Source of the DNA: Macrostomum lignano
Lineage: Eukaryota
Direction: 5' to 3'
DNA: 64,000 nucleotides
Assembly (NCBI GenBank): GCA_002269645.1
Contig: NIVC01002328.1
Span: forward strand, 60,923-124,922
Below, one piece after another: positions 3,354 to 53,500 of the stretch. The notes beneath the pieces were generated by a model. It was not told the origin of the DNA. It worked only from the letters and a program-made list of their open reading frames with translations, and made no database searches. Positions within the stretch are counted from its first letter, which is position 1. The number at the start of each line of letters is the position of its first letter. The position numbers and the translations under genes are program-made.

Positions 3354-3410
<57 letters not shown>

Positions 3411-3537: not shown

Positions 3538-3571
<34 letters not shown>

Positions 3572-6867: not shown

Positions 6868-7234
6868 TCTACATGTAGTTTTCCATACTGATAGATTCTG
6901 ATTCAGAGGAAGCTGAAGTTCGAGTACTAGGATGAAGGCGCTTGCGATGCCCAAGTGAAATACCTAATGGAGTCATGCCTAAAAATGAAACTTGTGTGGG
7001 CACCGCCAATTCCTCTTTCAACTGATACTGCCGCGTACATATTTCACTGGTGTACAATTAACGGTAAAGTAAAATTTTAACCTTGAATTTGAACTCGTGA
7101 ACTCACCACTAATCTTCAGGCCTCAAGCCAGCTGGCAGCAGCGGTTTATCCAGCTGCAGAGCGGCGACAATCAGAATGCCATCTGCTGCGGCGGCAAGGC
7201 CGTGGAGCAGAGCTGCAGCATCTCGACCGACCCG

Positions 7235-9775
7235 ATGCACGGTACGGTGCCACTGCAGCTGCTTCCGCCAACCGGTGGCATCGACAAGCTAACCCAGATG
7301 CGCCTAATCAGCGAGGACCCGGAGGTGCGCAAGGTTCGCTTAACAAGCGGCGTCAAGTGCAAGAGCCTGTTGAACGACGCGCTGGCCGAGCCGCTGCCGC
7401 CGAGGATTCGCCGGCCGGGCGAAGGCAAATTGCATTCGCGGAGAAAGTCGGAAAGAAAGCTGATTAAAACATGGCAACCGCCGTTGAACCGCACGAAGAA
7501 GCAGAAGGACCTTGACAAGAGCCTGGACCACTTGCCGTTCTTTGGCAGTTGTCGCTACGATAGAATGAAGTTACTGAAACAAGTTACGGAAGTGCGACCG
7601 CTGCGCGGCATGATCAACTACGGCCGGTACTACATAGAAAAGGACTGGAAGAACTACATTGACCCGCGCACGGACCCGGACACTCTGCTGAATTTGCTAG
7701 TGCTGGACAGTCGAAAGCGGAGAAAGTTTCGATCAAGCGGGCCAGTGTATCGCATTGTTGAGCTGTTCATGGAGAAGGTGTTCGACTGGAGTTTATCGAA
7801 GGAGATGCTGGACAGAAATGTGTCGTCAAAGAAATCGAGCATCGCGCTGCTCTGGCTGGGACCCTGTCTGGCTAAGAAGATGCTCAACGAGCTCTGCATA
7901 GTCAACGACCCGAGCAGGTCCTACATGCTAGCCGGCACTCGGTCCGTTGACGAAGATTTCTACTTGATCAATCGACTAGCCATTGACGTCTTCTTCAGCG
8001 ATAAGGAGGCTTTCTACTACATGCTGAAGGGCTACGTACTCAGCCCGTCTCTCACCTGCAAGACCCAGCCTAGTGAGATGCGATTTTGTGGCGACAACGC
8101 CAACGTATCGTGCTTAGATCTCGAAGCGAATCGCTCCGTAACCAGGCGAATTTGCGTCCACCAGAACTTGTCGCTTTCTCTGAAGCCTTGCTTGGTGCCG
8201 AACTGTCCTAACTATAAGCTTCCTGTGTGCGAGCACCTGTACGCATTCATACCGGAGACTATTACTATCAACTCTTACGTCTCTATGTTGCACTTTATTG
8301 AACGCTTCCACCGTGTCGAAGATCTAAAAGGTACCATCTTCATCACTAAGCCTGCTTATCTTTGCAACGGTCGCGGTATCAACTTCCTAGTTGATGTCAA
8401 ACAGTTTGAGTGCTTCTATCACATGCTGGATGGAAAATCAACCAGCAGGCACGGCGTTATACTGCAGCGGTACATCGAGTGCCCAAGACTGTTTGACCAC
8501 AGCAAATTCACTATTCGATTCTTCCTACTGATTATCGTGCTGCCAAGGCGCCGCGTCATCGGTTTTATTCATTACGGATTGGCCATATTCTGCCTTTTGC
8601 CCTACCAGCAGGTCAGTCAGTTTATTTTTCCAGCTGGCCTCCTCGGCTAGCGTTTGATTTTTCTATCGAGCCGAGCCATTTTAAACTTACTTTTCAGGCT
8701 GTTTTAGTGTCATACCTTCCATGCCTTATGGTTGCTTCAGCGACTTGGCTTCCATGCTTTGCATATTGTTTTATTCACGTGGCTTTCATGCCTTGTAGGT
8801 TGTTTCAATCACGTGGCTTCCATACTTTGGCGAGCAGTCCGTTTTGCAGATTTATAAAGTTATTCGAAGGCGCTTACTCGTAGCACCCATTTGTGTGATT
8901 TAATTTTCATTTCAAACAATCAGGTGAATCGCGAGGACTTCCCGCCCGAGGAGGAGGCGCTGGAGGGCAAAGAGCCGAACCTGAAAATCCCGATCGCCAA
9001 CCGGACTGTCGGACGCGTCCTGACCGAGCGGTTTAGCCGACAATCGCATTTGTCGAACTATCGCGACCCGAACGTCCTGACTATGATCAAGGAAGAAATT
9101 AAATATGGCCGGGCATCCATGATGGAGATGGACGAAGACAATGTTTTCTACATTGAGGATGTCCTGCCAGCTAAATGCCTGAACTCCAAGTCTATTTACA
9201 TACAGATGCTGTTCGCCTCCCAGTGCATCATGGACTACATGCAGCCGGTTGTTCAAGACTATCCCGGAACGTTCCAGACTGTGTCCATTGACTCGCTGGT
9301 TGACGCGCGCAACAAACTGTGGATTCTAGAGGCTGGCACAAAGATCTTCTCCGGACTGTTGACCGTGGCACCCAGGCAGCGGCAAATAATGTCCAGCATC
9401 ATTCAGGAGTCTTTAGGCATCACAGTGGAGTGCTTCTACAAGAGCCTAATGGGCCTGCCGCTCTACTGGGACTACAACAATGCTTGCGAAGATTACGACG
9501 CTTTCTACTTCGCCCAGGACTTCAACTTTTTCTACGAGACCGACGTCAATAAGCAGACTAGCGAGCCCGAGGTGCAGAGGCAGCTCAGAGCGCCGAGGCT
9601 GCCGCCGCCGCCGCCGCCAGGCAAGAAACTGGAGGATCGATACCGCGAAGTCGACGACATGCGACAGCTGGCGCGCCGTCGAAAGCTGGAGAATGCCCGG
9701 CGCAAACGGGAAGTTGTTGCCCAGAGGCTGGCCTACATCAACCGGCTGAAGCAGAAGACTTCAGAGGAGTCTTAG
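7235..9775 (+). CDS. Divergent tubulin-tyrosine-ligase-like protein (TTLL, most like the TTLL10/glycylase group), about 742 aa
   Basis: Exons 7235-8611 (CAG|gtcagt) and 8924-9775 (aatcag|GTG). TTL-domain motifs ITKPAYLCNGRGI, LQRYIECP, KFTIR, HLSN, SIDSLVD and WILEAG. Start is uncertain: 7235 is the first in-frame ATG after a probable 56-nt intron at 7064-7119. Confidence 0.8.
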
Positions 9776-16693: not shown

Positions 16694-19102
16694 ATGACCG
16701 CCTTGTCACAACTGCTACTGCTTCAAGTGCTGACAGTGTCTGCAATGGTGGCAGGCCTGCAGCAGCACTACCCGAAGCCGGAGTGCGACTGTTTTATCCG
16801 CCAGCCGCAAAGGCTGTCGAGCCTGCGGCAGCACTATCTGCAGCAGCAGGTCGGGGGTGAGTTGTTCTGCCAGAACAGCCACGCCTCGCCTCTGCCGTAT
16901 CCGCATCAGCAGCAGCCGCTTAGAGGCGCCAATTTTTATTGCGCCGACTACAAACTGCGCGCCGAGAACTTTGGAATCGGTGCTATCGAAGGCCAATTGT
17001 TGAAAACTCTGGCAGTTTCCACGCATATTCAACAGGTTGAACTAACCGGAAATCGGCTGTCGCTGCTCACCCAGGCCCACTTTGCCTCGGTGCCGAATCT
17101 GCGGCGACTGAGTTTGAATCGCAACGCGATTCGCGAATTAAATTATCACGCATTCAACGGCTTGCACCGCCTGTTCTACTTGGACTTGGACGACAACCGG
17201 CTCATAGAGATCACGCCAATGACATTTGGCACCACGACTGTGCACTCGACTGGGCATCGGTGCAATCTCAGGTCTTTGGTCTACCTGTATCTAGCTAATA
17301 ATCAGATTGAACACATCGAGCCGAAAAGCTTCGAGTGCATGACCAACCTGCGCGAGCTCAACCTGCAGAAGAACATCATCAAGATGCTGCCAGACCGAGC
17401 CTTCTTCAACCTGCTCTCGCTGAACACGCTGAAACTTTACGACAACCAGATTAGCGAAATCCACGAGCTTGCCTTCACCGAATGCTGCGGCTTGATCCGC
17501 TACCTGAGCCTGGTGGACAACAGGCTGTCCGACTTGCCGCACAACACCTTGAAGACGATGGAAAACCTCACCAGCCTGTACCTGGACCGCAACCAGTTCG
17601 TCCACGTGCCAAATTACCTGCTATCTACCATCGACAGTCACCAGCGCAGCGCCTCGTCGAAGATCTCCGACTTCCATCTGCAGCGCAATCACATCGTGCA
17701 GATTAGTCGGAAAGATTTCCAAGGCGCCGGGAAAGTTGAGTCAGTCAATCTATTCGATAACAGCATTCAGCGCATCGAGGACTACAGCTTCTCCAGCCTG
17801 AGCTATACCGTTAATCTCGTGTTGCAGAAGAACGAAATTCGAAGCGTAACCAATCGAACATTTTCTGGCCTAGTCCGGCTCCGCTATCTGATCCTGACGG
17901 ACAACCGGTTGGAGCACATCGACGACTGCGCGTTCAGTCCGTTGATCCGACTGGACACCCTGTCTCTGGCCTCCAACCGGCTCACAGGTGTGCGCCGGCT
18001 CATGTTCAAGAACCTCAACTATACGTTCTCGCTAAATCTAGCTTCGAACTACATCAACCAGCTGCAAGGAGACGAGTTCAGTCTGCTGCCTGGACTCAAA
18101 TATTTGTACTTGGAGAAGAACTCGCTAACTCACCTGCGCAAAAACTATTTTCAAGGCCTCGCCGGATTGCGCAAGCTCGACCTGAGCGACAATCGAATTC
18201 GAACTATCGATCCGTTAACATTCGGCAAACTGGACCAGCTGGCGTTTCTCGACCTGAGCGGCAATCTCCTGACGTCAGTGTGCTCCTACGAGCTGCACGG
18301 CTTGTCCAGTTTGCACTCGCTGCTGCTTGGCAAGAACCAAATTGCCAGCTTTGATCCGGACGCTCTAGACCAGCTGGCTGACTCGCTGAACCTGCTGGAC
18401 CTGCACGACAACCGCCTGACTGAGTTCTCCACTGGCTACACTAAGCCCGGGATGAGTCTGGTCTACTTGGACTTGAGCAGCAACCGGCTGATATTGGACG
18501 ACGATTGCACTTTCTGCGGCTTCGACTCTGTCCGACACGCACACATCGGCGTGGCTACGCGGAGCGGCGACAACGGCACGAGTGTCGATTTCCGGTTGAA
18601 CTCGGCTCGACTGCCCGGCCTTGGCGGCGGCGGGCCGTCCGGCCTTCTCGACCTGACCGTGAACGGCGTCTCCAGCCGCAACAGTTGGTCTGGGCCGTGC
18701 AGGCCGGGGGCCGTTTCCGGGTGTCGCGAGGTTCGGGCTAGCCGAATCCAGACCGCCAGGAACCTCGCCTGCGCCGGCGGCGGCAGCGGCAGCTCCGATG
18801 TAAACAGCAACGGAAGATCCAACGGGAAATCTGGCCATGACGGCTCCCACTCGGGCGTGACGCTCAGCCACGTCGTGCTGTACGTGTCTATCCCGGTGCT
18901 GCTGCTCCTCCTGGCTGCCGCCGCAATCGTTCTCGGCTTCTGCGTGGCCTCGAGGCGGAAGAGCGCACTCAGGCGGAGACAATTTCAACAGCGACACATC
19001 TGGGAGCCGGACTCGAACCTGCTCGAGCTGAACGTTGAGCAGTCATCCAGCATGTCTGAGATGCCCAAGTTCAGCAATAAAATCTATGGAAATCTGTTGT
19101 GA
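16694..19102 (+). CDS. Single-pass leucine-rich-repeat receptor or adhesion protein, 802 aa, no TIR domain
   Basis: Intronless ORF. Signal peptide, Cys LRR-NT (ECDC...FC), 20 counted LxxLxLxxNxL repeats, degenerate Cys-containing cap, TM VVLYVSIPVLLLLLAAAAIVLGFCVA, basic stop-transfer segment, and a tail of about 45 aa ending IYGNLL. Confidence 0.92.
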   Translation: MTALSQLLLLQVLTVSAMVAGLQQHYPKPECDCFIRQPQRLSSLRQHYLQQQVGGELFCQNSHASPLPYPHQQQPLRGANFYCADYKLRAENFGIGAIEGQLLKTLAVSTHIQQVELTGNRLSLLTQAHFASVPNLRRLSLNRNAIRELNYHAFNGLHRLFYLDLDDNRLIEITPMTFGTTTVHSTGHRCNLRSLVYLYLANNQIEHIEPKSFECMTNLRELNLQKNIIKMLPDRAFFNLLSLNTLKLYDNQISEIHELAFTECCGLIRYLSLVDNRLSDLPHNTLKTMENLTSLYLDRNQFVHVPNYLLSTIDSHQRSASSKISDFHLQRNHIVQISRKDFQGAGKVESVNLFDNSIQRIEDYSFSSLSYTVNLVLQKNEIRSVTNRTFSGLVRLRYLILTDNRLEHIDDCAFSPLIRLDTLSLASNRLTGVRRLMFKNLNYTFSLNLASNYINQLQGDEFSLLPGLKYLYLEKNSLTHLRKNYFQGLAGLRKLDLSDNRIRTIDPLTFGKLDQLAFLDLSGNLLTSVCSYELHGLSSLHSLLLGKNQIASFDPDALDQLADSLNLLDLHDNRLTEFSTGYTKPGMSLVYLDLSSNRLILDDDCTFCGFDSVRHAHIGVATRSGDNGTSVDFRLNSARLPGLGGGGPSGLLDLTVNGVSSRNSWSGPCRPGAVSGCREVRASRIQTARNLACAGGGSGSSDVNSNGRSNGKSGHDGSHSGVTLSHVVLYVSIPVLLLLLAAAAIVLGFCVASRRKSALRRRQFQQRHIWEPDSNLLELNVEQSSSMSEMPKFSNKIYGNLL

Positions 19103-19834
19103 ATTTCCAACTGGCGCGCCAAGCAACAAGAGTTGTACAGAAATGCTTGGTGCATATGCAACTATCAGTTTTAATTAATTACTTAATGCTTCATCGCAAT
19201 TTGAAATTGATTACCAACTATCAGTATGATCTCAGCGAAGCTGTCACTGTTTTTTACTTACAATCGTTTAGTTGGCCTCGATCCATTTCACAATAAAAAT
19301 CCACATAGTTCAACATTAAGCTGTAATCCCCATAGCCTCGCTACCTCTGAAAGTTTTGTTCTACTCGTGTCATGAATGAGTCAGGATGACATGCCAACCG
19401 ATTGATTTTTTTCAGTTTTGTCTGCCTGTCACGGTTTCTTTTTGTCTTGAAAGTGTCTAAAAGCGTTTTCCTATTTGTCAATCAATATTTTGTACCAGTT
19501 GGCCTGTTCTCCCATAGGATGAATGAGGGTTCACTCTCTGTGCAGTGAATATTGTACTTAGTACAGATGTCTGCATTGCATTGCAAAGATTGCATCAACA
19601 GCTTATTGTACAAACTGATTCAAGCTCAATAAAAATTCAACTGTACAATGCGCTACACTGGCCTGAGCTGTCCTATCGAATATTTTGTATCTGTCTTTAG
19701 CTCAATGAGAAAGTTACAAAATAGGAGCTGAGCTACAAATTTTTGTAGTATGAGATCAGAAGGCAGATTGAGGTGCCGGTAGATATAATTTGAAAAGTTA
19801 AAAGTTAAAATTAGGTTAGGAGACTCAGTGGGGG

Positions 19835-20835
19835 AGAGCGGAGAGGCAGATTCAGTCAGAGAGCAGAGAGGCAGATTCAGTCAGAGAGTGGAGAGGCAGA
19901 TTCAGTCAGATAGCGGAGAGGCAGATTCAGTCAGAGAGCGGAGAGGCAGATTCAGTCAGAGAGAGCGGAGAGGCAGATTCAGTCAGAGAGTGGAGAGGCA
20001 GATTCAGTCAGATAGCGGAGAGGCAGATTCAGTCAGAGAGCGGAGAGGCAGATTCAGTCAGAGAGCGGAGAGGCAGATTCAGTCAGAGAGCGGAGAGGCA
20101 GATTCAGTCAGAGAGCGGAGAGGCAAATTCAGCCAGAGCGGACAGGCAGATTCAGCCAGAGCGGAGAGGCAGATTCAGTCAGAGAGGAGAGGCAGATTCA
20201 GTCAGAGAGGAGAGGCAGATTCAGTCAGAGCGGAGAGGCAGATTCAGTCAGAGAGGAGAGGCAGATTCAGTCAGAGCGGAGAGGCAGATTCAGCCAGAGC
20301 GGAGAGGCAGATTCAGCCAGAGCGGAGAGGCAGATTCAGTCAGAGCGGAGAGGCGGAGCGGAGAGGCAGATTCAGTCAGAGAGCGGAGAGGCAGATTCAG
20401 TCAGAGCGGAGAGGCAGATTCAGTCGGAGCGGAGAGGCAGACTCAGCCAGAGCGGAGAGGCAGATTCAGCCAGAGCGGAGAGGCAGATTCAGCCAGAGCG
20501 GAGAGGCAGATTCAGCCAGAGCAGAGAGGCAGATTCAGTCAGAGCGGACAGGCAGATTCAGCCAGAGCGGAGAGGCAGATTCAGTCAGAGCGGAGAGGCA
20601 GATTCAGCCAGAGCGGAGAGGCAGATTTAGCCAGAGCGGAGAGGCAGATTCAGCCAGAGCGGAGAGGCAGATTCAGCCAGAGCGGAGAGGCAGATTCAGT
20701 CAGAGCGGAGAGGCAGATTCAGTCAGAGCGGAGAGGCAGATTCAGTCAGAGCGGAGAGGCAGATTCAGCCAGAGCGGAGAGGCAGATTCAGTCAGAGCGG
20801 AGAGGCAGATTCAGCCAGAGCGGAGAGGCAGACTC
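19835..20835. repeat. 23-25 bp purine-rich minisatellite
   Basis: GAGCGGAGAGGCAGATTCAGTCA variants. Confidence 0.97.
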
Positions 20836-21164
20836 AGAGTCAAGAGAGAACTTCAATCATTTTATTTAAAAAAACTAAGAAAGCCTCAGCCAGCTAGGCG
20901 GCTTAATTTCTTGTTAACTTTATTTCCTCAGAATTTATTCTTTGCAAAGTTCCGCTTGACCGACATTTTAGCCGTTTATTTGCTGCAGCAAAAAAGTATT
21001 TATTGATTTTATAATTATTTTACAATCTAAAAGACATCCATGCAATTTATCGTATACAGCGTTTGGTATAAGATTTATCCTTAGTGTAATGTGACAGCAT
21101 GCGTGTACCAAGTAATCCAAGCAGTTAATCCAAGTATGACAAAAAGAGCAAATTTGGCATTAGC

Positions 21165-28612: not shown

Positions 28613-29859
28613 ACTACGCCTGTATTCGGTGCGAAAGTTAATATGTTCTGTGTCGCGTCGCGTTTTTGAGCTACAATTTTAGACCCCGTGTCGCGTGTCC
28701 GCAGGTTTTTTACACTTATTCCAATAGGGCGGATAGCCCGTACCTTTTGCAGCATATTGCCAAAGGCCGAAAACTTCGGAAGGGTGACCAGCGCTGAGCG
28801 TGGAGATTAAATCTCCAGCCACGCCTGCTCTAAAAAAGAGGTTGAGCAGGTGTAAAACATCCCAGACTGCAGCTCGAGGGCCTGTCTCATTTCATAGGCA
28901 TCCTGTACCTACCGCTGTTAGCTCCAACTCAGCCTGATTCGGCGTGCAATCTGTCTAATTCAGCCTAAAAGCAGCCAGTTCGGCTTATATTCAGCTAATT
29001 TATTTCTCCCGATCTGTCTAATTCGGAGTTCTCTCTGTTTCCGTTTCCTGTCTTAGGACATTGTGCCGTGTGGGGGGGGGCAACATAAGCTAGGCAAAAT
29101 AGACAATTATAGTCCACTAAGTTCGTGTGATGGCGTCACAGCCAAGTATATTTTTCGATAGGCCAACAAAGACGTCGCGAAAAAACAGACAAGATCTGGC
29201 AAGGTTTCTACCTCGCGTGTCGGATCCGAGATCCTCACTAATACGAAATGCTTCTTTTGCCGACTTTAGCTTTGATCAGTATCAATCTGTCCAGTTTGCT
29301 TAGTCTTTCATAATAATGTTGCATGCCGAGTAACTTGAGTCCGGCTTGTGTAGCTGTGCACACTTTCTAAACTTGCTACACTGGCGGCTTTATCAGACGA
29401 TGCTTGATCGATTGCTTTTTTCGAAAATTTGAATTGGGGTGCGTTGAGAACGGTCCTTTGGCCATAGACATTCTCAGCGAGCGGTCTGCCGTGAGTTCCA
29501 ATAAAATTTTACGAATTCGATGGAGAGATCCATGCCTGTGGCTTGCGAAGGGAGGTAGGGAGCTTTCGAACTACAGTAGGACGTCTCGAACACGTCTAAA
29601 TTGTAGTATTCACTAATCAGCAACTAACGAACGAGCGCAAATAACTGCAAATCAAATGCGAGTATTTTTAGCCATTTTGGCTGTGACCGTCCATCTGTTT
29701 ATAGGAAAAAAGCTGTCCTTTATGCTTCTGTCTATTTATTTAAAGCCAAATTGCGTCAAGTGAACCAACAACATAGTAGGCCAGTCAATAACTTTGCTGT
29801 AAATTGCTTTTGCCATGCAGTCATGTCTCATTCTGGGTGGTTATCACTGCGACTTTTTT

Positions 29860-30393
29860 CTAGAACGGAGTGCGCTTCTTCCAGAAAGGATCCCGCTTCC
29901 AGAATGGAGCACGCTTCCAGAATGGAGCCCGCTTCCAGAATGGAGCACGCTTCCAGAATGGAGCCCGCTTCCAGAATGGAGCACGCTTCCAGAATGGAGC
30001 ACGCTTCCAGAATGGAGCACGCTTCCAGAATGGAGCCCGCTTCCAGAATGGAGCCCGCTTCCAGAAAGGAGCACGCTTCCAGAATGGAGCCCGCTTCCAG
30101 AATGGATCCCGCTTCCAGAATGGAGCCCGCTTCCAGAATGGAGCACGCTTGTCCTCTTTCAAAGCGTCGTGATCCGGCATCTCCATCTCAGCAGCGTCGC
30201 TCTCCTCGCCAAGCATTCGTTCGTCATCAGACGCTGCTACAGTCGCCGCTTCAACAGCCGCCTCGTGCCGTTGCAGGCCGCCATGGTCAGCGTGTCTGGC
30301 CGAAGTGGCTTCGGCTGCTTCAGCTGACGCGGTGACCAACGCAGCAGAGAGTATCAGGCAGAGGCCAGCTCGAAGGATGGCAGAACCCCGCAT
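29860..30393 (-). CDS. Neuropeptide precursor (xPFW peptides: 13 APFW, 2 DPFW, terminal TPF), 177 aa
   Basis: ATG at 30393. Signal peptide, acidic pro-region, then 15 tandem 18-bp units each encoding KR-xPFW. Unit variation is mostly synonymous (CGT/CGG, CCA/CCT). Confidence 0.9.
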   Translation of the reverse strand: MRGSAILRAGLCLILSAALVTASAEAAEATSARHADHGGLQRHEAAVEAATVAASDDERMLGEESDAAEMEMPDHDALKEDKRAPFWKRAPFWKRDPFWKRAPFWKRAPFWKRAPFWKRAPFWKRAPFWKRAPFWKRAPFWKRAPFWKRAPFWKRAPFWKRAPFWKRDPFWKKRTPF

Positions 30394-33171
30394 CACTGTT
30401 GTTGTGCTTGGCTTTGGTTTGAATCAACCTACGGATTACAAAATAGGGCGATGCGAGCTCTGTAAGTTGAGATTACAGCTTTTAAGAAGCAAAATCAGTT
30501 GTGAACAGGTGCAGAACACAGGAGCCAACACTCACGTCGCGTGGCGATGTCCCAGTCTCGAGCTGAAAACAATGGATGATTGGGGGAGTAATGCAAAGGT
30601 ATTTGCCGCTGCTCACTGTTGCAAATTTTAGACACTGAGCTGCCTCGGCCAAAGCAGAAGAGAATGCGAGCAGTTTGAAATACTGTCAAATTCAGACTCT
30701 TTATGAAAGTCGGGACGAAGGCCGCTCAGCAATGACTCTCAACTCTTATTGGCTTTCACCTGTCCTGTCTGGCCAAGGCTCCTAGCATTAAGCGAGAGGA
30801 GACATATTGTCTCCACTTACCGGGGATCGTCACTTGCCGCCTCCGTTTCTGTGCGACTCCTCAGAGTTGGGAAATTTCTCCGCTAGCGAAGTCAACGGAG
30901 CTGCTGCTGGTCTCCTTTTATCCCCGAGGCCCAAGCCAGCGACGCTAATCCGATCGTCTAATTGTCCCAGCAACGAGTCCCGCTCTGGTTATTTAATTAT
31001 GGCCTCAGCCAGACAAACTGTCTGCCTGACTGTCAAGCATTAGATTTTATTCCTCATCTAAGCCGGGCGACGCTGCAAACTGACAACATCTGCGTCGAAA
31101 ATGAATTCCCAAATTGTCCCTGTCCGGTTACTGGGAGCCTCACACTCGCAACCGGTACAAGCCAGCATGCAGCTGCAGCTGGATTGTGTGCTCATACGCG
31201 ATCGCAGAAATTCAACTAGATTAATAAAATTAGTTGCCATGGAAATGTCAAACTGGATTGAAGAAATGTTGCAGTTGCGCATAGCGCCACAATATCAGCA
31301 GCATTTTCCCGTACAACTCAGTGCATTGTGCTCCGTTTTAATTGGGACTTTAGGCAGCATCAAAGTTGCAAATGTAGCAGGTCGTGCCGCCAAATGAGAT
31401 TGTTGACTGTACGTACGTACTTTTATCCGAAAGATGACTTAGCACTGGATCGCAGCCGAGTTTCTCAATGCAAAACTGCAGAACAGAAGCATGACCTGAC
31501 CACACTGTGTGCATGTGCTTCTGGTTGGGTCAAGCGAGGGGCGGATGTCATGCTGCTAAGAGGCAGCCCATCTGCAGCCAGGTCTATGCAGACATTCTCT
31601 AGTCAGTGTTGCATTCATTATGGATGGTAACTTAGCACACAGCGTCCCAAACTGGTGACAAGAACATGCATGGACGTGGTCTGATTCAAGGACGTCTGGC
31701 TATCATCATCGTCAGACTCTGTGACTAAGCTGGACTATCTTGCTGGGGCAGCATTGCCAGTCTAACTGCGCACTGCTATTATTGATTTCTAGAGGAAAAG
31801 CTTTACAAGAATATCTACATACAATTAACGTATATGTTGTCTGAAACATAATACGAAAAAGGACAAAGCAAAATTCTTCTTTTGTTTTGGATCTTTGGAA
31901 CCTTCCAGGGTACCTTAAATTACATGCTTAAAATGCATCGCATGAGGATGTACGCGTCGCCTGCAGCTTTTACTTGCTGCCTTACCAAACTGCAGACAAC
32001 AAAATGGAACGGAAAATAATTAAAAGTGGCGATGGAGAGCCCCGTGTTTTGCTGCTTCTAAAAGATAAAACATTTTTGTTAAAAAATGATATATCTGCAC
32101 GGATTTGTTGACTCGAGATATTTGCTCTCCCGGCCTGCTTGGATGAAAATCACTTTCGAGTATTTCCTTTAGATGAATTCCAATACTTGTGACTGTCCCT
32201 ACGAGAGAGTATTTACCTGAAATTACTCTTGGTGGGTCTTGCTCGTTTTTCATGTACAGTACGACAGTTATTCAATACATAAATGGACTTTTTGATTGGC
32301 AATGCTTTAAAAAACTTCATTTGTGAGCATCTTTTGTATCACGAAAGCCCTTTCATGGCGCGGCTTCTATACACCCGTTCTATCTGGACAGTTGAAGTTG
32401 AAAGGACCGTTTCACTTGATTTTCGTAGAAATGAGTTGCATGCAGGTTGCCTGGGTTTTCTTATTTGTCTAATGGTAAAGCCTAAATGCACACTACCGGT
32501 ACGACAATATCAAATATGCGTTCTTTATCTGGCCTCCAGTTGATTTCTAAGAAAATCGAGTATGTGTGTACTCATAGCGTCCTTTAATTGTACACTTCAG
32601 TTGCTCGATATGTATGTACATTACATGCATGTACATCCATGCTGCAAGAGGTCCTCCACTTGGAATTCCAAATTTATGGGTACAAACAGTACCCATACCC
32701 ATGCTACGCGCAGCTGATCTTTGTGCCAATTGATTCGATTCCAAATTAACATACAGCTGTAACTGCATGGTTATAGCGCGCTGATGCTACACACATCAAA
32801 TTTTTTATTCTTCGTTTGGGTATTTTGTAGCTACAAAAACTGGCTAAAATATGGAAAAGTTACATGTAATAAGAATGGAATCTATTTAATCTCTGTTCGT
32901 CTACATTTACATTTACGTCTACATTTATAGTAGCAATAAAAAACTAACATGTATTAATGTACATACATATTGGCCGAGAGGTTATTGTTTGTTTTTGACT
33001 TGTTGATTACGAAAATCCACGCTTACATCTTGATAACGACAGATTTTGTGATCTAAATTCACATGAGGATGTTAATTTCCAACTTTTCAACACAAATTTG
33101 CTCATGTATAAACACATGCATTAACATGTATAACACAATTGTCACATGTCACACATACATGAATGCTTTAC

Positions 33172-35053: not shown

Positions 35054-37605
35054 ATGGCAAGCAGGCCATTTGGCGGTGGCCGCAAGAGCACCCTGGTGCC
35101 AATCAACACCAAGGCAGCGCCGCCAGAGCCGGATTCCGGCCTAGGGACGCCGTGCATCTCGTCGGCGTCAACGGACTCCTCGTCCGGCGGCTCGTCCGGG
35201 CGACGTAGGCGAGCAAATCAGCCGCTGAGGACCAGCTCCTCGGATGACGACAGCGCCGAGGACACCAGCAGCTGCGCCTCCTCCACCTGCCAGGTTTACC
35301 GTCGGGCGCCGGGCTTCCTGGACCATGCGCACGCTCACCCGGTGCAGCAGCACAGAGCAGGTGACGGAAGATTCCAGACTTTTTTATTTTGTGTCTTTCA
35401 TCAGATGTCCCTGCAGTGTCCTCCATCAGCTGTCCCTACAGTGTCCTCCATCAGCTGTCCCTGCAGTGTCCTCCATCAGATGTCCCTGCAGTGTCCTCCA
35501 TCAGATGTCCCTGCAGTGTCCTCCATCAGATGTCCCTGCAGTGTCCTCCATCAGATGTCCCTGCAATGTCCTCCATCAGATGTCCCTGCAGTGTCCTCCA
35601 TCAGATGTCCCTGCAGTGTCCTCCATCAGCTGTCCCTACAGTGTCCTCCATCAGATGTCCCTGCAATGTCCTCCATCAGCTGTCCCTGCAGTGTCTTCCA
35701 TCAGCTGTCCCTGCAATGTCCTCCATCAGCTGTCCCTACAGTGTCCTCCATCAGATGTCCCTGCAGTGTCCTCCATCAGCTGTCCCTACAGTGTCCTCCA
35801 TCAGCTGTCCCTGCAATGTCCTCCATCAGCTGTCCTTGCAATGTCCTCCATCAGATGTCCCTACAGTGTCCTCCATCAGCTGTCCCTGCAATGTCCTCCA
35901 TCAGCTGTCCCTGCAGTGTCCTCCATCAGATGTCCCTGCAGTGTCCTCCATCAGATGTCCCTGCAATGTCCTCCATCAGATGTCCCTGCAATGTCCTCCA
36001 TCAGCTGTCCCTGCAGTGTCCTCCATCAGCTGTCCCTGCAGTGTCCTCCATCAGCTGTCCCTGCAATGTCCTCCATCAGCTGTCCCTACAGTGTCCTCCA
36101 TCAGCTGTCCCTGCAATGTCCTCCATCAGCTGTCCCTGCAGTGTCCTCCATCAGCTGTCCCTGCAATGTCCTCCATCAGCTGTCCCTGCAGTGTCCTCCA
36201 TCAGCTGTCCCTGCAGTGTCCTCCATCAGCTGTCCCTGCAGTGTCCTCCATCAGCTGTCCCTGCAATGTCCTCCATCAGCTGTCCCTGCAGTGTCCAGCT
36301 CCATCCTGCCCTGCTTACTTATTAAAGTAAACAAATCAATGCATTCTCTTTCGCAAAAACTTCTCCGAATTGAACTGGATAGGCGGCGGCCGTCTGAAGG
36401 AGAAGCGCGCCCTTCTTCAGCAGCAGCAGCAGCTTCCGTCCGTGGCCCCAGTAGCCGCCAGCGTTCCCATGCGAAGCCGCCACCTTCCCAAGTCGATGTG
36501 GCAGGAGCCGGACGAAGCCAGCTACAGTCCGGCCACACTGCTGCCGCGGCTGGCTCTGCACCGTAGCGTCGACGACGTCTCCGAGCTGGGTAAGAAGAGC
36601 GAACCTGATTGCCCATCCTACTTTTAGTAGACTTTGCGCGTATTTTTCGGCCTAATGGGCAAAAGCTTATCAAACTGATTTTTAACTGCAACCAAGGACC
36701 TGAAGAAACATTTTTTCTCTCATGCGTGCTTCTTCATCTGTCCGCAATTTACCCACAGGCCTAACCGGCAGTTCCCCGTTTAGAAACCGGTGCGCGGCGG
36801 GCGGCCCGCTTAAACCGCCGATTCGAACGGTGCTCAACTTGGATCCGAGCGAGTGCCTGCAGAGGAAACTCTTTGAGGTGGCGCTGAAGCCTCCGCCAGC
36901 CATTGAGCAGCAAAAGAAGCAGCAGCAGCTCCGGCCAACTGACCGGTGAGTCACTGGAGACTTCCTTCTTCATCTCTGGTTGAGAGCGCTTTGCCTGGGA
37001 TCCCTGTGAATGACATTGAGCTGTTCACCTTGAATCTCTGTGAATGATATTGAGCTGTTCACCTTAAATCTCTGTGAATGATATTGAGCTGTTCACCTTG
37101 AATCTCTGTGAATGACATTGAGCTGTTCACCTTGAATCTCTGTGAATGATATTGAGCTGTTCACCTTGAATCTCTGTGAATGATATTGAGCTGTTCACCT
37201 TGAATCTCTGTGAATGATATTGAGCTGTTCACCTTGAATCTCTGTGAATGATATTGAGCTGTTCACCTTGGATTTCTGTGAATGATATTGAGCTGTTCAC
37301 CTTGGATTTCTGTGAATGATATTGAGCTGCTCACCTGCGATTCCGAGAAAGCATCTATGATACTCACAAAGGATTTCCGTGCAAGAATGCAAAAAAATGG
37401 CAAAAACATGGCAACATCCCGCAGCCTGCAGCCCATAGCGCAGAGACCGCCAGTGGGCAGCAAGTCCAGCTTTCTATCCAACAATGATCCCTGCCTGAGT
37501 GACTGCAATAAATTTCCCTACCTGGGCCGGACAGGTCTGGCCGCGGCTGTGCTGTCTGACTCGTCTGACTGTCTGCACCAGCAACAGCCCCTGCAGCAGC
37601 AACTG

Positions 37606-43681: not shown

Positions 43682-46600
43682 GCCTGTCTGTCTGTCTGTC
43701 AGTCTGTCTGTCTGTCTGTCTGCCTGTCTGTCTGTCAGTCCCTCAGACCATCGGCTCACCTCAAGCGCCCTCTGCATGGTGGTGTGACAGCCGTTGAGCC
43801 TGAGCAGGGCGAACAGCAGCTGGAAGTAGCCGATGCACTGCATCTCAACCCCCGGATGATTTCTAATAACGTTGCGCAGAGCCTCAAGCGCGGCGTCAAC
43901 TTTAGTGAGGTTGCGCCGCTGGTCGTCGTTGAGAATCAACGTCTCCTGCTGGTCCCGCTGCATTGCCAGCAGCGAGTGCAGGTACTGGGCGCTCGTGTTC
44001 AGGTAGTGCAGAATGTCTATGGTCAAGCCTTTGGGATTCTGCGGTATCAGACGGGAGTTTGGGTGGCCCATTGGGATGCGTGGAGGTCACTAAAGCACTG
44101 AGATGTGTAGAGAAGGTCACTGAAGCACTGAGATGTGTAGAGAAGGTCACTGAAGCACTGAGATGTGTAGAGAAGGTCACTGAAGCACTGAGATGTGTAG
44201 AGAAGGTCACTGAAGCACTGAGATGTGTAGAGAAGGTCACTGAAGCACTGAGATGTGTAGAGAAGGTCACTGAAGCACTGAGATGTGTAGAGAAGGTCAC
44301 TGAAGCACTGAGATGTGTAGAGAAGGTCACTGAAGCACTGAGATGTGTAGAGAAGGTCACTGAAGCACTGAGATGTGTAGAGAAGGTCACTGAAGCACTG
44401 AGATGTGTAGAGAAGGTCACTGAAGCACTGAGATGTGTAGAGAAGGTCATTGAAGCACTGGAAAGAAAAGGTGAAGATTCCCCATCCAATGGTTACCTCC
44501 AGCGGATAAGTCGGCTGCTCATTGTACACTCGAATGAAAACGTCTCCGATGATGAGCTCCTTGCCGAAGATGCTGTACTGGAACTCGGTGCCCAGCGATT
44601 GGTCGCACTCGCCCTGGAAGGTCAAACACGAATTTAGTCTATGGGGCTGGTTTGGGGCGATTCTCAGTCTGGTTTAGGGGCGATTCTCAGGATGGTTTAG
44701 GGGCGATTCTCAGGATGGTTTAGGGGCGATTCTCAGTCTGGTTTAGGGGCGATTCTCAGTCTGGTTTAGGGGCGATTCTCAGTCTGGTTTAGGGGCGATT
44801 CTCAGTCTGGTTTAGGGGCGATTCTCAGTCTGGTTTAGGGGCGATTCTCAGTCTGGTTTAGGGGCGATTCTCAGTCTGGTTTAGGGGCGATTCTCAGTCT
44901 GGTTTAGGGGCGATTCTCAGTCTGGTTTAGGGGCGATTCTCAGTCTGGTTTAGGGACGATTCTCAGTCTGGTTTAGGGGCGATTCTCAGTCTGGTTTAGG
45001 GGCGATTCTCAGTCTGGTTTAGGGATGATTCTCAGTCTGGTTTAGGGGCGATTCTCAGTCTGGTTTAGGGGCGATTCTCAGTCTGGTTTAGGGGCGATTC
45101 TCAGTCTGGTTTAGGGGCGATTCTCAGTCTGGTTTAGGGGCGATTCTCAGGATGGTTTAGGGGCGATTCTCAGTCTGGTTTAGGGACGATTCTCAGTCTG
45201 GTTTAGGGGTGATTCTCAGGATGGTTTAGGGCGATTCTCAGTCTGGTTTAGGGGCGATTCTCAGGATGGTTTAGGGGCGATTCTCAGTCTGGTTTAGGGA
45301 CGATTCTCAGTCTGGTTTAGGGGTGATTCTCAGGATGGTTTAGGGGTGATTCTCAGTCTGGTTTGGGGCGATTCTCAGTCTGGTTTGGGGCGATTCTCAG
45401 TCTGGTTTAGGGGCGATTCTCAGTCTGGTTTAGGGGCGATTCTCAGTCTGGTTTAGGGGCGATTTTCAGGATGGTTTAGGGGTGATTCTCAGATGGTTTA
45501 GGGGTGATTCTCAGTCTGGTTTGGGGCGATTCTCAGTCTGGTTTAGGGGCGATTCTCAGTCTGGTTTAGGGGCGATTCTCAGTCTGGTTTAGGGGCGATT
45601 CTCAGTCTGGTTTAGGGGCGATTCTCAGTCTGGTTTAGGGGCGATTCTCAGTCTGGTTTAGGGGCGATTCTCAGTCTGGTTTAGGGGCGATTCTCAGTCT
45701 GGTTTAGGGGCGATTCTCAGTCTGGTTTAGGGGCGATTCTCAGTCTGGTTTAGGGGCGATTCTCAGTCTGGTTTAGGGGCGATTCTCAGTCTGGTTTAGG
45801 GGCGATTCTCAGTCTGGTTTAGGGACGATTCTCAGTCTGGTTTAGGGGCGATTCTCAGTCTGGTTTAGGGGCGATTCTCAGTCTGGTTTAGGGATGATTC
45901 TCAGTCTGGTTTAGGGGCGATTCTCAGTCTGGTTTAGGGGCGATTCTCAGTCTGGTTTAGGGGCGATTCTCAGTCTGGTTTAGGGGCGATTCTCAGGATG
46001 GTTTAGGGGCGATTCTCAGGATGGTTTAGGGCGATTCTCAGTCTGGTTTAGGGACGATTCTCAGTCTGGTTTAGGGGTGATTCTCAGGATGGTTTAGGGG
46101 CGATTCTCAGTCTGGTTTAGGGGCGATTCTCAGGATGGTTTAGGGGCGATTCTCAGGATGGTTTAGGGGCGATTCTCAGGATGGTTTAGGGGCGATTCTC
46201 AGTCTGGTTTAGGGGTGACTTAACAAACAAACCAACTAACAGCTCTGATTTCAGGCTCCGTTGCAGAGGCCCCACTCACAGTGCGAATCAGACTCTGCTG
46301 CTGGTCCTCCAAATAGCCCAACAGTTCGGCCCTGGTCGCATTGTCCCAGATTAAATATGGCGTCTGGCAATTGGAATTCAGCAGCTTCAGCAGCCAGCCT
46401 GGCCGCTGGTCCTGCATTCGGCGGCAAACAAACGGCGTGACCAGAGCCTTCAGCGACTGCTGCACTGACGGATTGTCTGGATAGCAGGCGCCGCCGTCGC
46501 TGCTGCTGTTGCTCGCGTCTGCGGCCACTGCGGGGACGTCGTCTGAGGCCTCGGCTCGGCCAGGCTCGCCCGAGTCGACCGCTACGGCCACTGTCGGGGA

Positions 46601-50500: not shown

Positions 50501-53500
50501 ATTATTAACCAGCTAGTTATACTACTGAGTAGAACCCTAAGGATATTAACGCAAAAAGGTTTCACAACATTTTAAATGAAAATTAAGTCCTTAGTTTGCA
50601 AAACGATAAAAGAACGGAAAAATAAAAATATCATTGTGTACTTTTGCGCAGATATTTTTAAAGTACATCGCTTCTATAATGGAAACAGGCAGCGTATCAA
50701 GTTTGTGAAAATTTCTAATTTGTTAAGTTTCGAGCTCGTGACGATTCGAGCTTGTGAAGTTTTAAGCATGTGAAGCTTCGAGCTTGTGAAGATTCGAGCT
50801 CGTGAAGATTTGAGCTTGTGAAGATTCGAGCTTGTGAAGTTTTAAGCATGTGAAGCTTCGAGCTTGTGAAGTTTCGAGCTGGTGAAGTTTCGAGCTTGTG
50901 AAGTTTTAAGCATGTGAAGCTTCGAGCTTGTGAAGATTCGAGCTTGTGAAGTTTCGAGCTTGTGAAGTTTCGAGCTGGTGAAGTTTTAAGCTTGTGAAGA
51001 TTCGAGCTTGTGAAGATTCGAGCTTGTGAAGATTCGAGCTTGTGAAGATTCGAGCTTGTGGAGTTTCGAGCTTGTGAAGATTCGAGCTTGTGAAGTTTTA
51101 AGCATGTGAAGCTTCGAGCTGGTGAAGCTTCGAGCTGGTGAAGATTCGAGCTGGTGAAGATTCGAGCATGTGAAGCTTCGAGCTGGTGAAGCTTCGAGCT
51201 GGTGAAGATTCGAGCTGGCGAAAACAATTCCTCAGCTTGACATTGTTTCACATTGTGAAGATTCGAGCTTGTGAAGATTCGAGCTGGTGAAGATTCGAGC
51301 TGGTGAAGCTTCGAGCTGGTGAAGATTCGAGCTGGTGAAGATTCGAGCTGGTGAAGATTCGAGCTGGTGAAGATTCGAGCTGGTGAAGCTTCGAGCTGGT
51401 GAAGCTTCGAGCTGGTGAAGATTCGAGCTGGCGAAAACAATTCCTCAGCTTGACATTGTTCACCAACTAAGCTAAGGAACAGTTACACTTTACCCTAATT
51501 TATTATACTATATTAGAACACAGTAACCAGTTAGAGTAGAAAAATTAAAAACATTTTAACTTAACTTACAACATTAACAGTTTGACAGGGCACCACAGGA
51601 GAGGGGGTAGGGAGAGACAAACAGATAGAGGAGGCAACAGTCATGTACATTGCCCAGGGCAACTTTATGCCCAAGCATTAGAAATGTACACTTAATGACA
51701 TGCCAGATTACATACGTGAGGGTGTGTTCAGGCATATGACAGCTATCTACATGTAATATCTCCTCTCTTGCCAAAGGCTGAAACACGCAACTGTATTTCA
51801 TGGCCTGTTGACTTCACTTTTGCGTGCAGTGATTCAACTTCAACATGGCTTAAATATCTGATATCGTTGCACTATTATGCACTTTGCAGTAATAAATGTA
51901 CATGGTGTCTGCAGAATTGCGCTTGAGGAAACAAAATTGTCCAATGCAATAATTTTGAGCTTGATATTTCTAGGCTTGATATTTCCCCATTTCATAACTT
52001 TATGTTAAATATCATGGGGGTATCAGTGTCCCACTGACTGATCAGGGGTATTAGTTCCCCAGTGACAGATCATGGGGGTATCAGTGTCCCACTGACTGAT
52101 CAGGGGTATTAGTTCCCCAGTGACAGATCATGGGGGTATCATTGTCCCACTGACTGATCAGGGGTATTAGTTCCCCAGTGACAGATCATGGGGGTATCAT
52201 TGTCCCATTAACAGAAGCATGCCACAGAGCAGGGGTATCAGTGCCCCATTAACAGAAGCATGACACAGATCAGGGATATCACTGTCCCATTAACAGAAGC
52301 ATGACACAGATCAGGGGTATCAGTGCCCCATTAACAGAAGCATGACACAGATCAGGGATATCAGTGCCCCATTAACAGAAGCATGACACAGATCAGGGAT
52401 ATCAGTGCCCCATTAACAGAAGCATGACACAGATCAGGGATATCAGTGCCCCATTAACAGAAGCATGCCACAGAGCAGGGGATATCAGTGCCTCATTAAC
52501 AGAAGCATGACACAGATCAGGGATATCAGTGCCCCATTAACAGAAGCATGACACAGATCAGGGATATCAGTGCCCCATTAACAGAAGCATGCCACAGAGC
52601 AGGGGATATCAGTGTCCCATTAACAGAAGCATGCCACAGAGCAGGGGATATCAGTGTCCCATTAACAGAAGCATGCCACAGAGCAGGGGATATCAGTGCC
52701 CCATTAACAGAAGCATGCCACAGAGCAGGGGATATCAGTGTCCCATTAACAGAAGCATGCCACAGAGCAGGGGTATCAGTGTCCCATTAACAGAAGCATG
52801 ACACAGATCAGGGGTATCAGTGTCCCATTAACAGAAGCATGACACAGATCAGGGATATCAGTGTCCCATTAACAGAAGCATGACACAGATCAGGGGTATC
52901 ACTGTCCCATTAACAGAAGCATGACACAGAGCAGGGGATATCAGTGCCCCATTAACAGAAGCATGACACAGATCAGGGGATATCAGTGTCCCATTAACAG
53001 AAGCATGACACAGAGCAGGGGATCAGTGCCCCATTAACAGAAGCATGACACAGATCAGGGATATCACTGTCCCATTAACAGAAGCATGACACAGATCAGG
53101 GGTATCAGTGTCCCATTAACAGAAGCATGACACAGATCAGGGGTATCAGTGTCCCATTAACAGAAGCATGACACAGATCAGGGATATCAGTGCCCCATTA
53201 ACAGAAGCATGACACAGATCAGGGATATCAGTGCCCCATTAACAGAAGCATGACACAGATCAGGGGATATCAGTGTCCCATTAACAGAAGCATGACACAG
53301 AGCAGGGGATCAGTGCCCCATTAACAGAAGCATGACACAGATCAGGGGATCAGTGCCCCATTAACAGAAGCATGCCACAGAGCAGGGGATATCAGTGCCT
53401 CATTAACAGAAGCATGACACAGATCAGGGATATCAGTGCCCCATTAACAGAAGCATGACACAGATCAGGGATATCAGTGCCCCATTAACAGAAGCATGCC

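What the first reader, a model, noticed from the sequence alone, without database searches (positions are those of the whole stretch)
29860..30393. Neuropeptide precursor releasing 15 non-amidated xPFW tetrapeptides
Seen: signal peptide, acidic spacer, then KR-APFW x13 and KR-DPFW x2, ending KKR-TPF-stop. No Gly precedes the basic sites, so the products would be free acids. Unlike the window's other tandem arrays, unit variation is mainly synonymous, which indicates selection on the peptide. Established: multi-copy dibasic-flanked precursors are typical prohormones. APGWamide is similar but amidated, while achatin (G-dF-A-D) is a non-amidated tetrapeptide family with a D-residue. I do not recognise APFW as a named family. 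Inference: a possibly undescribed peptide signalling system with its own GPCR, and possible isomerisation at position 2 or 3.
Basis: partly seen in the sequence, partly recalled or inferred. Interest (0 to 1): 0.85.

Follow-up and report, generated by a model that had tools for sequence, protein, structure and literature searches.

The report
Flatworm precursor for APFW peptides
This is a real single-exon gene of the flatworm Macrostomum lignano encoding a secreted precursor that should be cut into 15 tiny non-amidated peptides (APFW/DPFW), and it belongs to a little-noticed family of "-FW" peptide precursors also found in tapeworms.

Summary
On the minus strand, 30393..29860 encodes 177 aa: a signal-like N-terminus, an acidic spacer, 13 KR-APFW and 2 KR-DPFW units, then KKR-TPF-stop, with no Gly before any basic site. 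The window is Macrostomum lignano contig NIVC01002328.1.

An open frame alone proves nothing here. 13 of 30 tandem arrays in the window have a stop-free frame, and this array is open in all six frames.

The gene is shown to be real by relatives with the same architecture:
- An environmental contig encodes APFW and DPFW with 5-6 nucleotide differences per 18-nt unit, all synonymous.
- Diphyllobothriid and taeniid tapeworm precursors (SAFW, ASFW, SDFW, ENFW...) end in FW-stop.
- A second M. lignano copy differs by 1.2% in the flanks and by nothing in a 913-bp block containing the gene.

UniProt labels two taeniid members "Neuropeptide". I found no paper describing the family. It is absent from a Taenia crassiceps list of npp families 1-44, although that species has an orthologue.

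The planarian npp-12 (KR-NYFG x3 plus NYFW, expressed in neurons) is a possible relative.

Most likely this is a prohormone-convertase-processed signalling-peptide precursor. Neuronal expression, the mature peptides and a receptor are untested. It is a new member of a known kind and of moderate interest.

The parts
29860..30393 (-). Complete single-exon CDS (177 codons plus TAG) of the APFW/DPFW precursor
   Evidence: The exact product is encoded on two contigs of M. lignano assembly GCA_002269645.1.
30322..30393 (-). Predicted signal peptide MRGSAILRAGLCLILSAALVTASA. It has two Arg in the n-region and a 10-residue core with mean Kyte-Doolittle 2.9. The A-x-A motif suggests cleavage before EAAE.
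   Evidence: heuristic only; SignalP was not available. Every family member has a comparable N-terminal hydrophobic core.
30151..30321 (-). Acidic spacer propeptide of 57 aa, unique sequence. One search counted 17 Asp+Glu against 8 Lys+Arg+His over a 59-residue stretch spanning this spacer.
   Evidence: It is not significantly similar to cestode spacers.
29881..30150 (-). Fifteen 18-nt units: KR-APFW x13 and KR-DPFW x2 (units 3 and 15)
   Evidence: Identical hexapeptides in L003 are encoded with 5-6 synonymous and 0 nonsynonymous differences per unit.
29860..29880 (-). Degenerate last unit K-KR-TPF plus stop. The TAG stop sits where the unit's TGG (Trp) codon would be, one substitution away.
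   Evidence: AAG AAG CGC ACT CCG TTC TAG against unit AAG CGG GCT CCA TTC TGG.
29735..29740 (-). AATAAA, candidate polyadenylation signal about 120 nt after the stop
   Evidence: sequence match only.
29511..30423 (.). 913-bp block with zero differences from the second genomic copy (L002, NIVC01000629.1), flanked by DNA that differs at 1.24% of positions
   Evidence: 21 differences in the 1687 bp outside the block and none inside it. Poisson P is about 1e-5 for the block and about 1.3e-3 for the CDS alone.

Best explanation
This is a protein-coding gene of Macrostomum lignano for a secreted prepropeptide.

Shown by the sequence: a signal-like N-terminus, an acidic spacer, 15 tandem KR-xPFW units, a degenerate last unit, and no Gly.

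Inferred from the established secretory-peptide pathway:
- The signal peptide is removed.
- A prohormone convertase (PC2/PC1-type) cuts after each Lys-Arg.
- A carboxypeptidase E/D-type enzyme trims the basic residues.
- This releases 13 APFW, 2 DPFW and 1 TPF per precursor, all with free C-termini because there is no Gly substrate for the amidating enzyme (PAM).

The functional core is the C-terminal Phe-Trp, which is the only part conserved in relatives from tapeworms and environmental samples. The peptides most likely act as intercellular signals (neuropeptide or peptide hormone) on an unidentified receptor. The high copy number and near-identical DNA units indicate a recent, concertedly evolving expansion of an old 4-8-copy precursor.
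For: - Anatomy.
- Organism: the locus matches M. lignano Mlig_3_7 contig NIVC01002328.1 exactly.
- Same peptides in another species: P0001/L003, a 30% GC environmental contig, encodes signal peptide, acidic spacer and KR-separated GKQFW, APFW, DPFW, EAFW and EPFW. The shared KRAPFW and KRDPFW units differ at 5-6 of 18 nt, all synonymous.
- Same architecture in cestodes: D. latus, Spirometra, Schistocephalus, Taenia and Echinococcus have 3-6 peptides that all end in FW. The cestode members seen complete, and the unidentified P0068, end in FW-stop, which argues for a free Trp C-terminus.
- UniProt names the E. granulosus and T. asiatica members 'Neuropeptide'.
- The two M. lignano copies are identical across the gene, including repeat number and pattern, while the flanks differ by 1.24%.
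- M. lignano has a PC2 homologue with nervous-system expression whose knock-down is lethal (PMC4490696).
- Planarian npp-12 has the same 6-residue period (KR-NYFG x3 then NYFW-KKK) and is expressed in brain and photoreceptor neurons. Its profile match is probability 94%, E 1.2e-7.
Against: - No transcript, peptide or expression data for the M. lignano gene were available to me.
- Signal-peptide prediction is heuristic only.
- Similarity to the cestode and planarian precursors rests on the short repeated motif. The N-terminal halves alone are not significantly similar, so convergence cannot be formally excluded for the distant members.
- Stop-free frames are common in this window's tandem arrays. 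FWKR-periodic ORFs without signal peptides are easy to find in a very large metagenome collection, so the motif alone is weak evidence.
- The origin of the UniProt name 'Neuropeptide' is unknown and may be automatic.
Confidence: 0.7

Rival explanations
1. The precursor is real, but the peptides are made by non-neuronal gland cells and act outside the body or on a partner, as a pheromone, seminal-fluid, adhesive-gland, defensive or antimicrobial secretion. They would not be neuropeptides.
For: Nothing in the sequence specifies the cell type. Multi-copy KR-processed precursors are also used for exocrine peptides. Planarian prohormone genes are also expressed in pharynx, intestine and adhesive glands (PMC2953531).
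Against: The family persists in endoparasitic tapeworms with very different ecology. Tetrapeptides are too short for typical membrane-active peptides. The possible planarian relative npp-12 is neuronal.
Confidence: 0.2
2. The ORF is a chance product of an 18-bp minisatellite in a repeat-rich genome. It is not translated.
For: 13 of 30 arrays in the window have stop-free frames, and this array is open in all six frames. Signal-less FWKR repeat ORFs occur by chance in metagenomes.
Against: The ORF extends 243 nt into unique sequence to an ATG with a signal-like peptide and acidic spacer. Identical peptides occur in another species with only synonymous differences. The same architecture is found in at least six cestode genera. 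There are zero differences between the two genomic copies across the gene.
Confidence: 0.03
3. The precursor is real, but the active products are not free tetrapeptides. Possibilities are partial cleavage giving longer KR-containing peptides, or further modification such as Trp or Pro modification or L-to-D isomerisation.
For: Processing is inferred, not observed. Cestode members carry a few KRR/KKR sites and peptides of 4-11 residues, showing that length is not fixed.
Against: Every unit is bounded by canonical Lys-Arg. The cestode members seen complete end in FW-stop, so an unextended Trp C-terminus is encoded directly. No modifying enzyme or motif is implicated, and position 2 of APFW is Pro, an unlikely isomerisation site.
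Confidence: 0.1

Closest known systems
Cestode -FW precursors: E. granulosus A0A068WEX8 / CDS16177.1 and T. asiatica A0A0R3W293 (UniProt name 'Neuropeptide'), E. multilocularis CDS40984.1, T. solium TsM_000200800, T. crassiceps TcWFU_000704, D. latus VDN16890.1 and VDK82978.1, Spirometra KAL7063363.1, S. solidus VDL91577.1 and VDL91578.1
   Same: Signal peptide, acidic spacer, and KR-separated short peptides that all end in Phe-Trp with no Gly. Tetrapeptides are common (SAFW, ASFW, SDFW, ENFW), and D. latus even encodes APFW.
   Different: They have 3-6 copies of varied sequence rather than 15 near-identical ones. Their last peptide ends in FW-stop, whereas M. lignano ends in TPF-stop. Their repeat DNA is not homogeneous. 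Their spacers are not alignable with the M. lignano spacer.
Schmidtea mediterranea npp-12 (GU295182; Collins et al. 2010, PMC2953531)
   Same: Signal peptide, acidic spacer, and a 6-residue period KR-x-x-F-x. The last copy is NYFW followed by KKK. Profile match to the -FW alignment has probability 94% and E 1.2e-7. BLASTP against P0001 gives E 4e-7 and includes an EFE motif in the spacer.
   Different: Three of its four copies end in Gly (NYFG), giving the amidated tripeptide NYFamide. It has only four copies. The similarity scores are driven by the repeat, so homology is plausible but unproven.
Molluscan APGWamide precursor
   Same: A multi-copy KR-flanked tetrapeptide with Ala-Pro at positions 1-2 and Trp at position 4 (from my own knowledge).
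   Different: APGWamide has Gly at position 3 and a C-terminal Gly amidation donor. Here position 3 is the conserved Phe and there is no Gly. Family members outside M. lignano often lack Ala-Pro altogether. This is a resemblance only.
Flatworm npp-29 (T. crassiceps TcrWFU_01870; supplement of PMC11196405)
   Same: It encodes a KR-flanked non-amidated tetrapeptide ending in aromatic-Trp (MLYW). This shows that such products are already accepted as candidate flatworm neuropeptides.
   Different: It has a single copy followed by a long unrelated C-terminal domain. There is no profile similarity (hhalign probability 2%).
Fungal KEX2-processed repeat precursors (ustiloxin / dikaritin type)
   Same: Signal peptide plus many KR-separated copies of a 4-6-residue core (from my own knowledge).
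   Different: Those are fungal precursors clustered with modifying enzymes. This locus is an animal genome, with RME-8, TTL, PGM and LRR genes around it.

Membership tests
Dibasic-processed multi-copy peptide-hormone/neuropeptide precursor (generic class) | N-terminal signal peptide | tested here: met
   Positively charged n-region, 10-residue hydrophobic core (mean KD 2.9) and an A-x-A site. This is heuristic; SignalP was not available.
Dibasic-processed multi-copy peptide-hormone/neuropeptide precursor (generic class) | Repeated short peptide, each copy flanked by Lys-Arg or Lys-Lys-Arg | tested here: met
   15 KR sites and one KKR site in register.
Dibasic-processed multi-copy peptide-hormone/neuropeptide precursor (generic class) | Between species, conservation is confined to the peptide and its cleavage sites | tested here: met
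   K, R, F and W columns are invariant while spacers are not alignable. Differences from L003 are 5-6 synonymous and 0 nonsynonymous per unit.
Dibasic-processed multi-copy peptide-hormone/neuropeptide precursor (generic class) | Processing enzymes present in the organism | tested here: met
   From the literature only: an M. lignano PC2 homologue (RNA815_2403.2) is expressed in the nervous system (PMC4490696).
Dibasic-processed multi-copy peptide-hormone/neuropeptide precursor (generic class) | Expression in neurons or endocrine cells, and mature peptides detectable | not testable with these tools
   No M. lignano transcriptome, in situ or peptidomic data were accessible.
Flatworm -FW precursor family (cestode 'Neuropeptide' / hypothetical proteins) | Signal peptide, acidic spacer, and at least 3 KR-separated peptides ending in Phe-Trp without Gly | tested here: met
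Flatworm -FW precursor family (cestode 'Neuropeptide' / hypothetical proteins) | Statistically supported sequence similarity | tested here: inconclusive
   phmmer finds P0001 at 1.8e-20, P0026 at 1.5e-8, P0043 at 9.5e-7 and P0068 at 2.9e-5. Profile searches recover the taeniid members. The scores come from the repeat; the N-terminal halves alone give E = 72 or no alignment.
Flatworm -FW precursor family (cestode 'Neuropeptide' / hypothetical proteins) | Last peptide ends in FW immediately before the stop codon | tested here: not met
   M. lignano ends in KKR-TPF-TAG, and the TAG is one substitution from the unit's TGG. P0001 also departs from this pattern, ending in ...FWKRDGN.
Planarian npp-12 (NYFamide) family | KR-x-x-F-G units giving an amidated tripeptide | tested here: not met
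   There is no Gly in any M. lignano unit; Trp occupies that position. Only the last Smed-npp-12 copy (NYFW) matches.
Planarian npp-12 (NYFamide) family | Profile or sequence similarity of the precursor | tested here: inconclusive
   hhalign probability 94%, E 1.2e-7 over 29 columns. BLASTP of P0001 against npp-12 gives E 4e-7. Both are dominated by the repeat.
APGWamide | APGW core followed by Gly (amidation) and dibasic site | tested here: not met
   The units are APFW-KR with no Gly.
Achatin-like peptides (G-[D-Phe]-x-D) | GFxD motif and a D-residue at position 2 | tested here: not met
   The motif is absent. Chirality cannot be tested from sequence.
Fungal KEX2-processed repeat RiPP precursors | Fungal genome context with clustered modifying enzymes | tested here: not met
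   The contig belongs to M. lignano. The neighbouring genes are metazoan-type RME-8, TTL, PGM and LRR genes.

The most novel reading that the evidence does not exclude
Free-acid peptides ending in Phe-Trp form a so-far undescribed, phylum-wide flatworm signalling system with its own receptor, present from Macrostomorpha to tapeworms. The planarian NYFamide gene npp-12 would be its orthologue. In that case a single TGG-to-GGG change (Trp to Gly) switched the product from x-x-F-W-COOH to x-x-F-amide, a rare documented route between a non-amidated and an amidated neuropeptide.
Probability: 0.3. Interest if true: 0.6.

Novelty: new member of a known kind. Interest (0 to 1): 0.45.

Why it matters
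Neuropeptide systems of flatworms are studied as drug targets in parasites and as regulators of regeneration and reproduction in free-living models. A peptide family shared by a transgenic laboratory model (M. lignano) and by Echinococcus, Taenia and the broad tapeworms would allow function and receptor to be worked out in the tractable species and then transferred to the parasites.

The family is also easy to miss. It is non-amidated, the peptides are very short, and the genes are small. They are annotated as 'hypothetical' and in one case mislabelled 'RxLR effector'. Recording the family is therefore useful for annotation. It is not a new kind of biology: the architecture and the inferred processing are textbook.

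Tried and rejected
- Full-text literature searches for APFW, DPFW, KRAPFW, PFWKR, AFWKR, SPFWKR, SPHFW and similar strings, and for the accession numbers of the cestode homologues, gave nothing relevant.
- Searches inside flatworm neuropeptide papers and their supplements for FW-type peptides: S. mansoni and Fasciola gave nothing. The T. crassiceps supplement lists npp 1-44 without this family. Collins 2010 yielded only npp-12 and 1020HH-1.
- Koziol et al. 2016 and McVeigh et al. 2009 are not held. I therefore could not check whether the Echinococcus gene carries an npp number.
- Pfam finds no domain and Rfam finds nothing in the window.
- The exhaustive phmmer search returned 106 hits, but apart from five true members they are unrelated repeat proteins.
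- The metagenome DNA-pattern scan returned more than 120 loci, almost all signal-less tandem repeats. It added no convincing member beyond L003.
- The within-array synonymous/nonsynonymous argument was rejected as insufficient on its own: 3 variable columns, P about 0.1.
- Homology to npp-29 was rejected.
- APGWamide, achatin and fungal RiPP memberships were rejected on their defining features.

Full report
**1. What is in the sequence**

The minus strand from 30393 (ATG) to 29860 (end of TAG) is one uninterrupted reading frame of 177 codons. It reads MRGSAILRAGLCLILSAALVTASA, then a 57-residue acidic stretch, then fifteen 6-residue units, then KKRTPF-stop. Thirteen units are KRAPFW. Units 3 and 15 are KRDPFW. 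Tandem Repeats Finder sees the array at 29878-30150 with period 18, 15.2 copies and 94% matches.

Only three of the 18 unit positions vary. They are the third base of Arg (CGT in 7 units, CGG in 8), the third base of Pro (CCT in 2 units) and the second base of the Ala/Asp codon (2 units).

The final unit is a decayed copy, AAG AAG CGC ACT CCG TTC TAG. Its stop codon sits where the Trp codon TGG should be, one substitution away. No unit has a Gly before the basic pair.

**2. Is it more than chance?**

The frame alone is not evidence. The window is packed with minisatellites. In 13 of 30 arrays at least one frame crosses the whole array without a stop, and the APFW array is open in all six frames. 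Another array (19.8-20.8 kb) even carries many dibasic pairs by accident. A pattern scan of a very large metagenome collection found more than 120 loci with FW-KR periodicity. Nearly all are repeat ORFs without a signal peptide. The within-array excess of synonymous variation, two of three variable columns, is also weak by itself (about P = 0.1 by my estimate).

Three other observations make the gene real.

- Only one frame has one dibasic site per unit. That frame continues 243 nt into unique sequence, to an ATG followed by a signal-like hydrophobic core and an acidic spacer.
- A 660-bp environmental contig (L003, 30% GC against 47% for the window) encodes a 104-aa protein, P0001. It has a signal peptide, an acidic spacer and KR-separated GKQFW, APFW, DPFW, EAFW, APFW, EAFW, EPFW and EAFW. 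Its KRAPFW and KRDPFW units differ from the M. lignano units at 5-6 of 18 nucleotides, and every difference is synonymous.
- The genome holds a second copy of the locus (L002). Over 2.6 kb the two copies differ at 21 places in the flanks (1.24%). They do not differ at all in a 913-bp block, window 29511-30423, that contains the whole gene with the same repeat number and the same pattern of synonymous variants. The Poisson P is about 1e-5 for the block and about 1.3e-3 for the CDS alone. Gene conversion is an alternative to selection for this point.

**3. Where the window comes from**

The encoded protein is found on exactly two contigs, NIVC01002328.1 and NIVC01000629.1, of assembly GCA_002269645.1. 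Several papers identify this assembly as Mlig_3_7 of the free-living flatworm Macrostomum lignano, a neopolyploid. That fits the two near-identical copies. The window is identical to the first contig over the stretch compared.

Neighbouring genes are ordinary metazoan genes:
- a phosphoglucomutase-type gene at 2.5-5 kb;
- a tubulin-tyrosine-ligase-like gene at 7.1-9.8 kb;
- a leucine-rich-repeat membrane protein at 16.7-19.1 kb;
- a multi-exon RME-8/DNAJC13 gene on the minus strand, running from about 41 to 62 kb.

The peptide gene lies alone in a gene-poor stretch. An AATAAA lies on the minus strand 120 nt after the stop (29740-29735). Rfam finds nothing in the window and Pfam finds nothing in the protein.

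**4. The family**

One word-indexed search, one exhaustive phmmer search of 1.84 billion representatives, and two profile searches recovered a coherent set. I inspected the hits by hand. The members are:
- two tandem genes in Dibothriocephalus latus, one with decayed cleavage sites;
- Spirometra;
- two neighbouring genes in Schistocephalus solidus;
- Taenia solium, T. asiatica and T. crassiceps;
- Echinococcus granulosus and E. multilocularis;
- four sequences from unidentified samples (P0068, P0113, P0117, P0118).

All have a signal-like N-terminus, an acidic spacer and 3-9 peptides bounded by KR, KRR or KKR that end in Phe-Trp. Examples are SPHFW, SPAFW, SAFW, ASFW, SDFW, YGNQAFW and ENFW. 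D. latus even has APFW. In the cestode members seen complete, and in the unidentified P0068, the last peptide is followed directly by the stop codon, so the free Trp C-terminus is encoded as such. The conserved element is thus -FW, not 'xPFW'.

Outside the peptides there is no detectable similarity. The N-terminal halves of the M. lignano and diphyllobothriid proteins give E = 72 or no alignment. This is usual for neuropeptide precursors. It also means that the E-values rest on the repeat.

Compared with its relatives, the M. lignano gene has two to four times as many copies and almost uniform DNA units. This points to a recent, concertedly evolving expansion.

**5. What is known about the family**

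In the databases the members are 'hypothetical' or 'unnamed'. The exceptions are the E. granulosus and T. asiatica entries, which UniProt calls 'Neuropeptide', and the two S. solidus entries, which are labelled 'RxLR effector protein' and evidently mislabelled.

I found no paper that describes the peptides. A 2024 study lists T. crassiceps orthologues of the established flatworm npp families (numbers 1 to 44). It does not contain this precursor, although T. crassiceps has one, TcWFU_000704. This suggests that the family is not in the standard set. The two key papers, McVeigh 2009 and Koziol 2016, are not in the library, so this is not proven.

The same list shows npp-29 with a KR-MLYW-KR tetrapeptide. 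Free-acid aromatic-Trp tetrapeptides are therefore already accepted candidates in flatworms, but npp-29 is not related by profile (probability 2%).

The planarian gene Smed-npp-12 is more interesting. It has a signal peptide, an acidic spacer, then KRNYFG three times and NYFW-KKK. It is expressed in the cephalic ganglia, in cells near the nerve cords, in the pharynx and in anterior photoreceptor neurons. The -FW profile matches it with probability 94% and E 1.2e-7. P0001 matches it by BLASTP with E 4e-7, including a short EFE motif in the spacer. Because both scores are repeat-driven, I treat homology as plausible, about even odds, and not established. If it is true, Gly and Trp alternate at the same unit position (GGG and TGG differ by one base). 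That switches the product between an amidated tripeptide and a free-acid tetrapeptide.

**6. How it most likely works**

Shown: the encoded architecture and its conservation.

Inferred from the established regulated-secretory pathway:
- co-translational removal of the signal peptide, most likely after TASA;
- cleavage after each Lys-Arg by a PC2/PC1-type convertase;
- removal of the basic residues by a carboxypeptidase E/D-type enzyme;
- no amidation, because peptidylglycine alpha-amidating monooxygenase needs a C-terminal Gly.

One precursor would yield 13 APFW, 2 DPFW, 1 TPF and one acidic propeptide. M. lignano has a PC2 homologue expressed in the nervous system whose knock-down is lethal in hatchlings (PMC4490696).

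That the peptides act as neuropeptides or hormones on a receptor is inference. It rests on the class, on the UniProt label of the taeniid members, and on the neuronal expression of the possible planarian relative. I put about 0.9 on a real secreted-peptide precursor and about 0.65 on a neuronal or endocrine signal.

The main rival is an exocrine peptide such as a pheromone, seminal-fluid or gland product (0.2). A non-coding minisatellite is essentially excluded (0.03).

**7. Verdict**

The finding is real and correctly described. The interpretation as a multi-copy, non-amidated peptide precursor holds. It is not an isolated novelty. It is the M. lignano member, unusually expanded, of a flatworm family of -FW peptides that is present but essentially uncharacterised in tapeworm genomes and may be related to planarian npp-12. 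That makes it a new member of a known kind. It has moderate interest, chiefly as an annotation gain and as an entry point, in a transgenic model, to a peptide system shared with medically important cestodes.

Noticed in passing
window 1-64000: Minisatellite density is extreme: TRF reports 70 rows, about 30 distinct arrays with periods of 3-288 bp. 13 of 30 arrays have at least one stop-free frame across the whole array, which produces many long spurious ORFs (for example 19828-21006 and 35054-36566).
   Followed up: partly
window 29878-30150: The APFW array is stop-free in all six reading frames. The plus-strand ORFs 29751-30335 and 29815-30327 are by-products of the repeat, not genes.
   Followed up: yes
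window 41349-62516, minus strand: A multi-exon RME-8/DNAJC13-like gene: Pfam RME-8_N matches at 57980-58603 and 59361-59843. Its apparent introns are largely filled with minisatellites (for example 44647-46215, 52181-54911, 56899-57952).
   Followed up: partly
window 2525-5001, 7097-9775 and 16694-19102, plus strand: A phosphoglucomutase-type gene interrupted by a (CAGA)n array at 3189-3570, a tubulin-tyrosine-ligase-like gene, and an 802-aa leucine-rich-repeat protein with a signal peptide and a C-terminal hydrophobic, membrane-anchor-like segment.
   Followed up: partly
L004 9778-10132 and 15340-15669 (Dibothriocephalus latus UYRU01043596.1): Two tandem -FW precursor genes lie 5 kb apart and the database gene model (P0002) fuses them. 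The second has decayed cleavage sites (ER, KQ, KH, GK instead of KR) and looks like a pseudogene or a diverging paralogue. Assembly gaps interrupt the first.
   Followed up: partly
P0109 and P0110 (Schistocephalus solidus VDL91578.1 and VDL91577.1, same contig): UniRef names these -FW peptide precursors 'RxLR effector protein'. This is an evident automatic mis-annotation.
   Followed up: no
P0117 (Logan contig) and P0118 (ENA metagenome contig): Two more distant precursors from unidentified organisms carry 6-9 longer KR-separated peptides ending in D/A-[SA]-FW (for example GDADSAFW and NAQDSFW). The -FW family may extend beyond the flatworms identified here.
   Followed up: no
Supplement of PMC2953531 (Smed-1020HH-1) and of PMC11196405 (T. 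crassiceps Npp 29): Other flatworm prohormones also encode non-amidated Trp-terminal peptides (YSYLKGGIRW; MLYW). A free Trp C-terminus is a recurring feature of flatworm peptides.
   Followed up: partly
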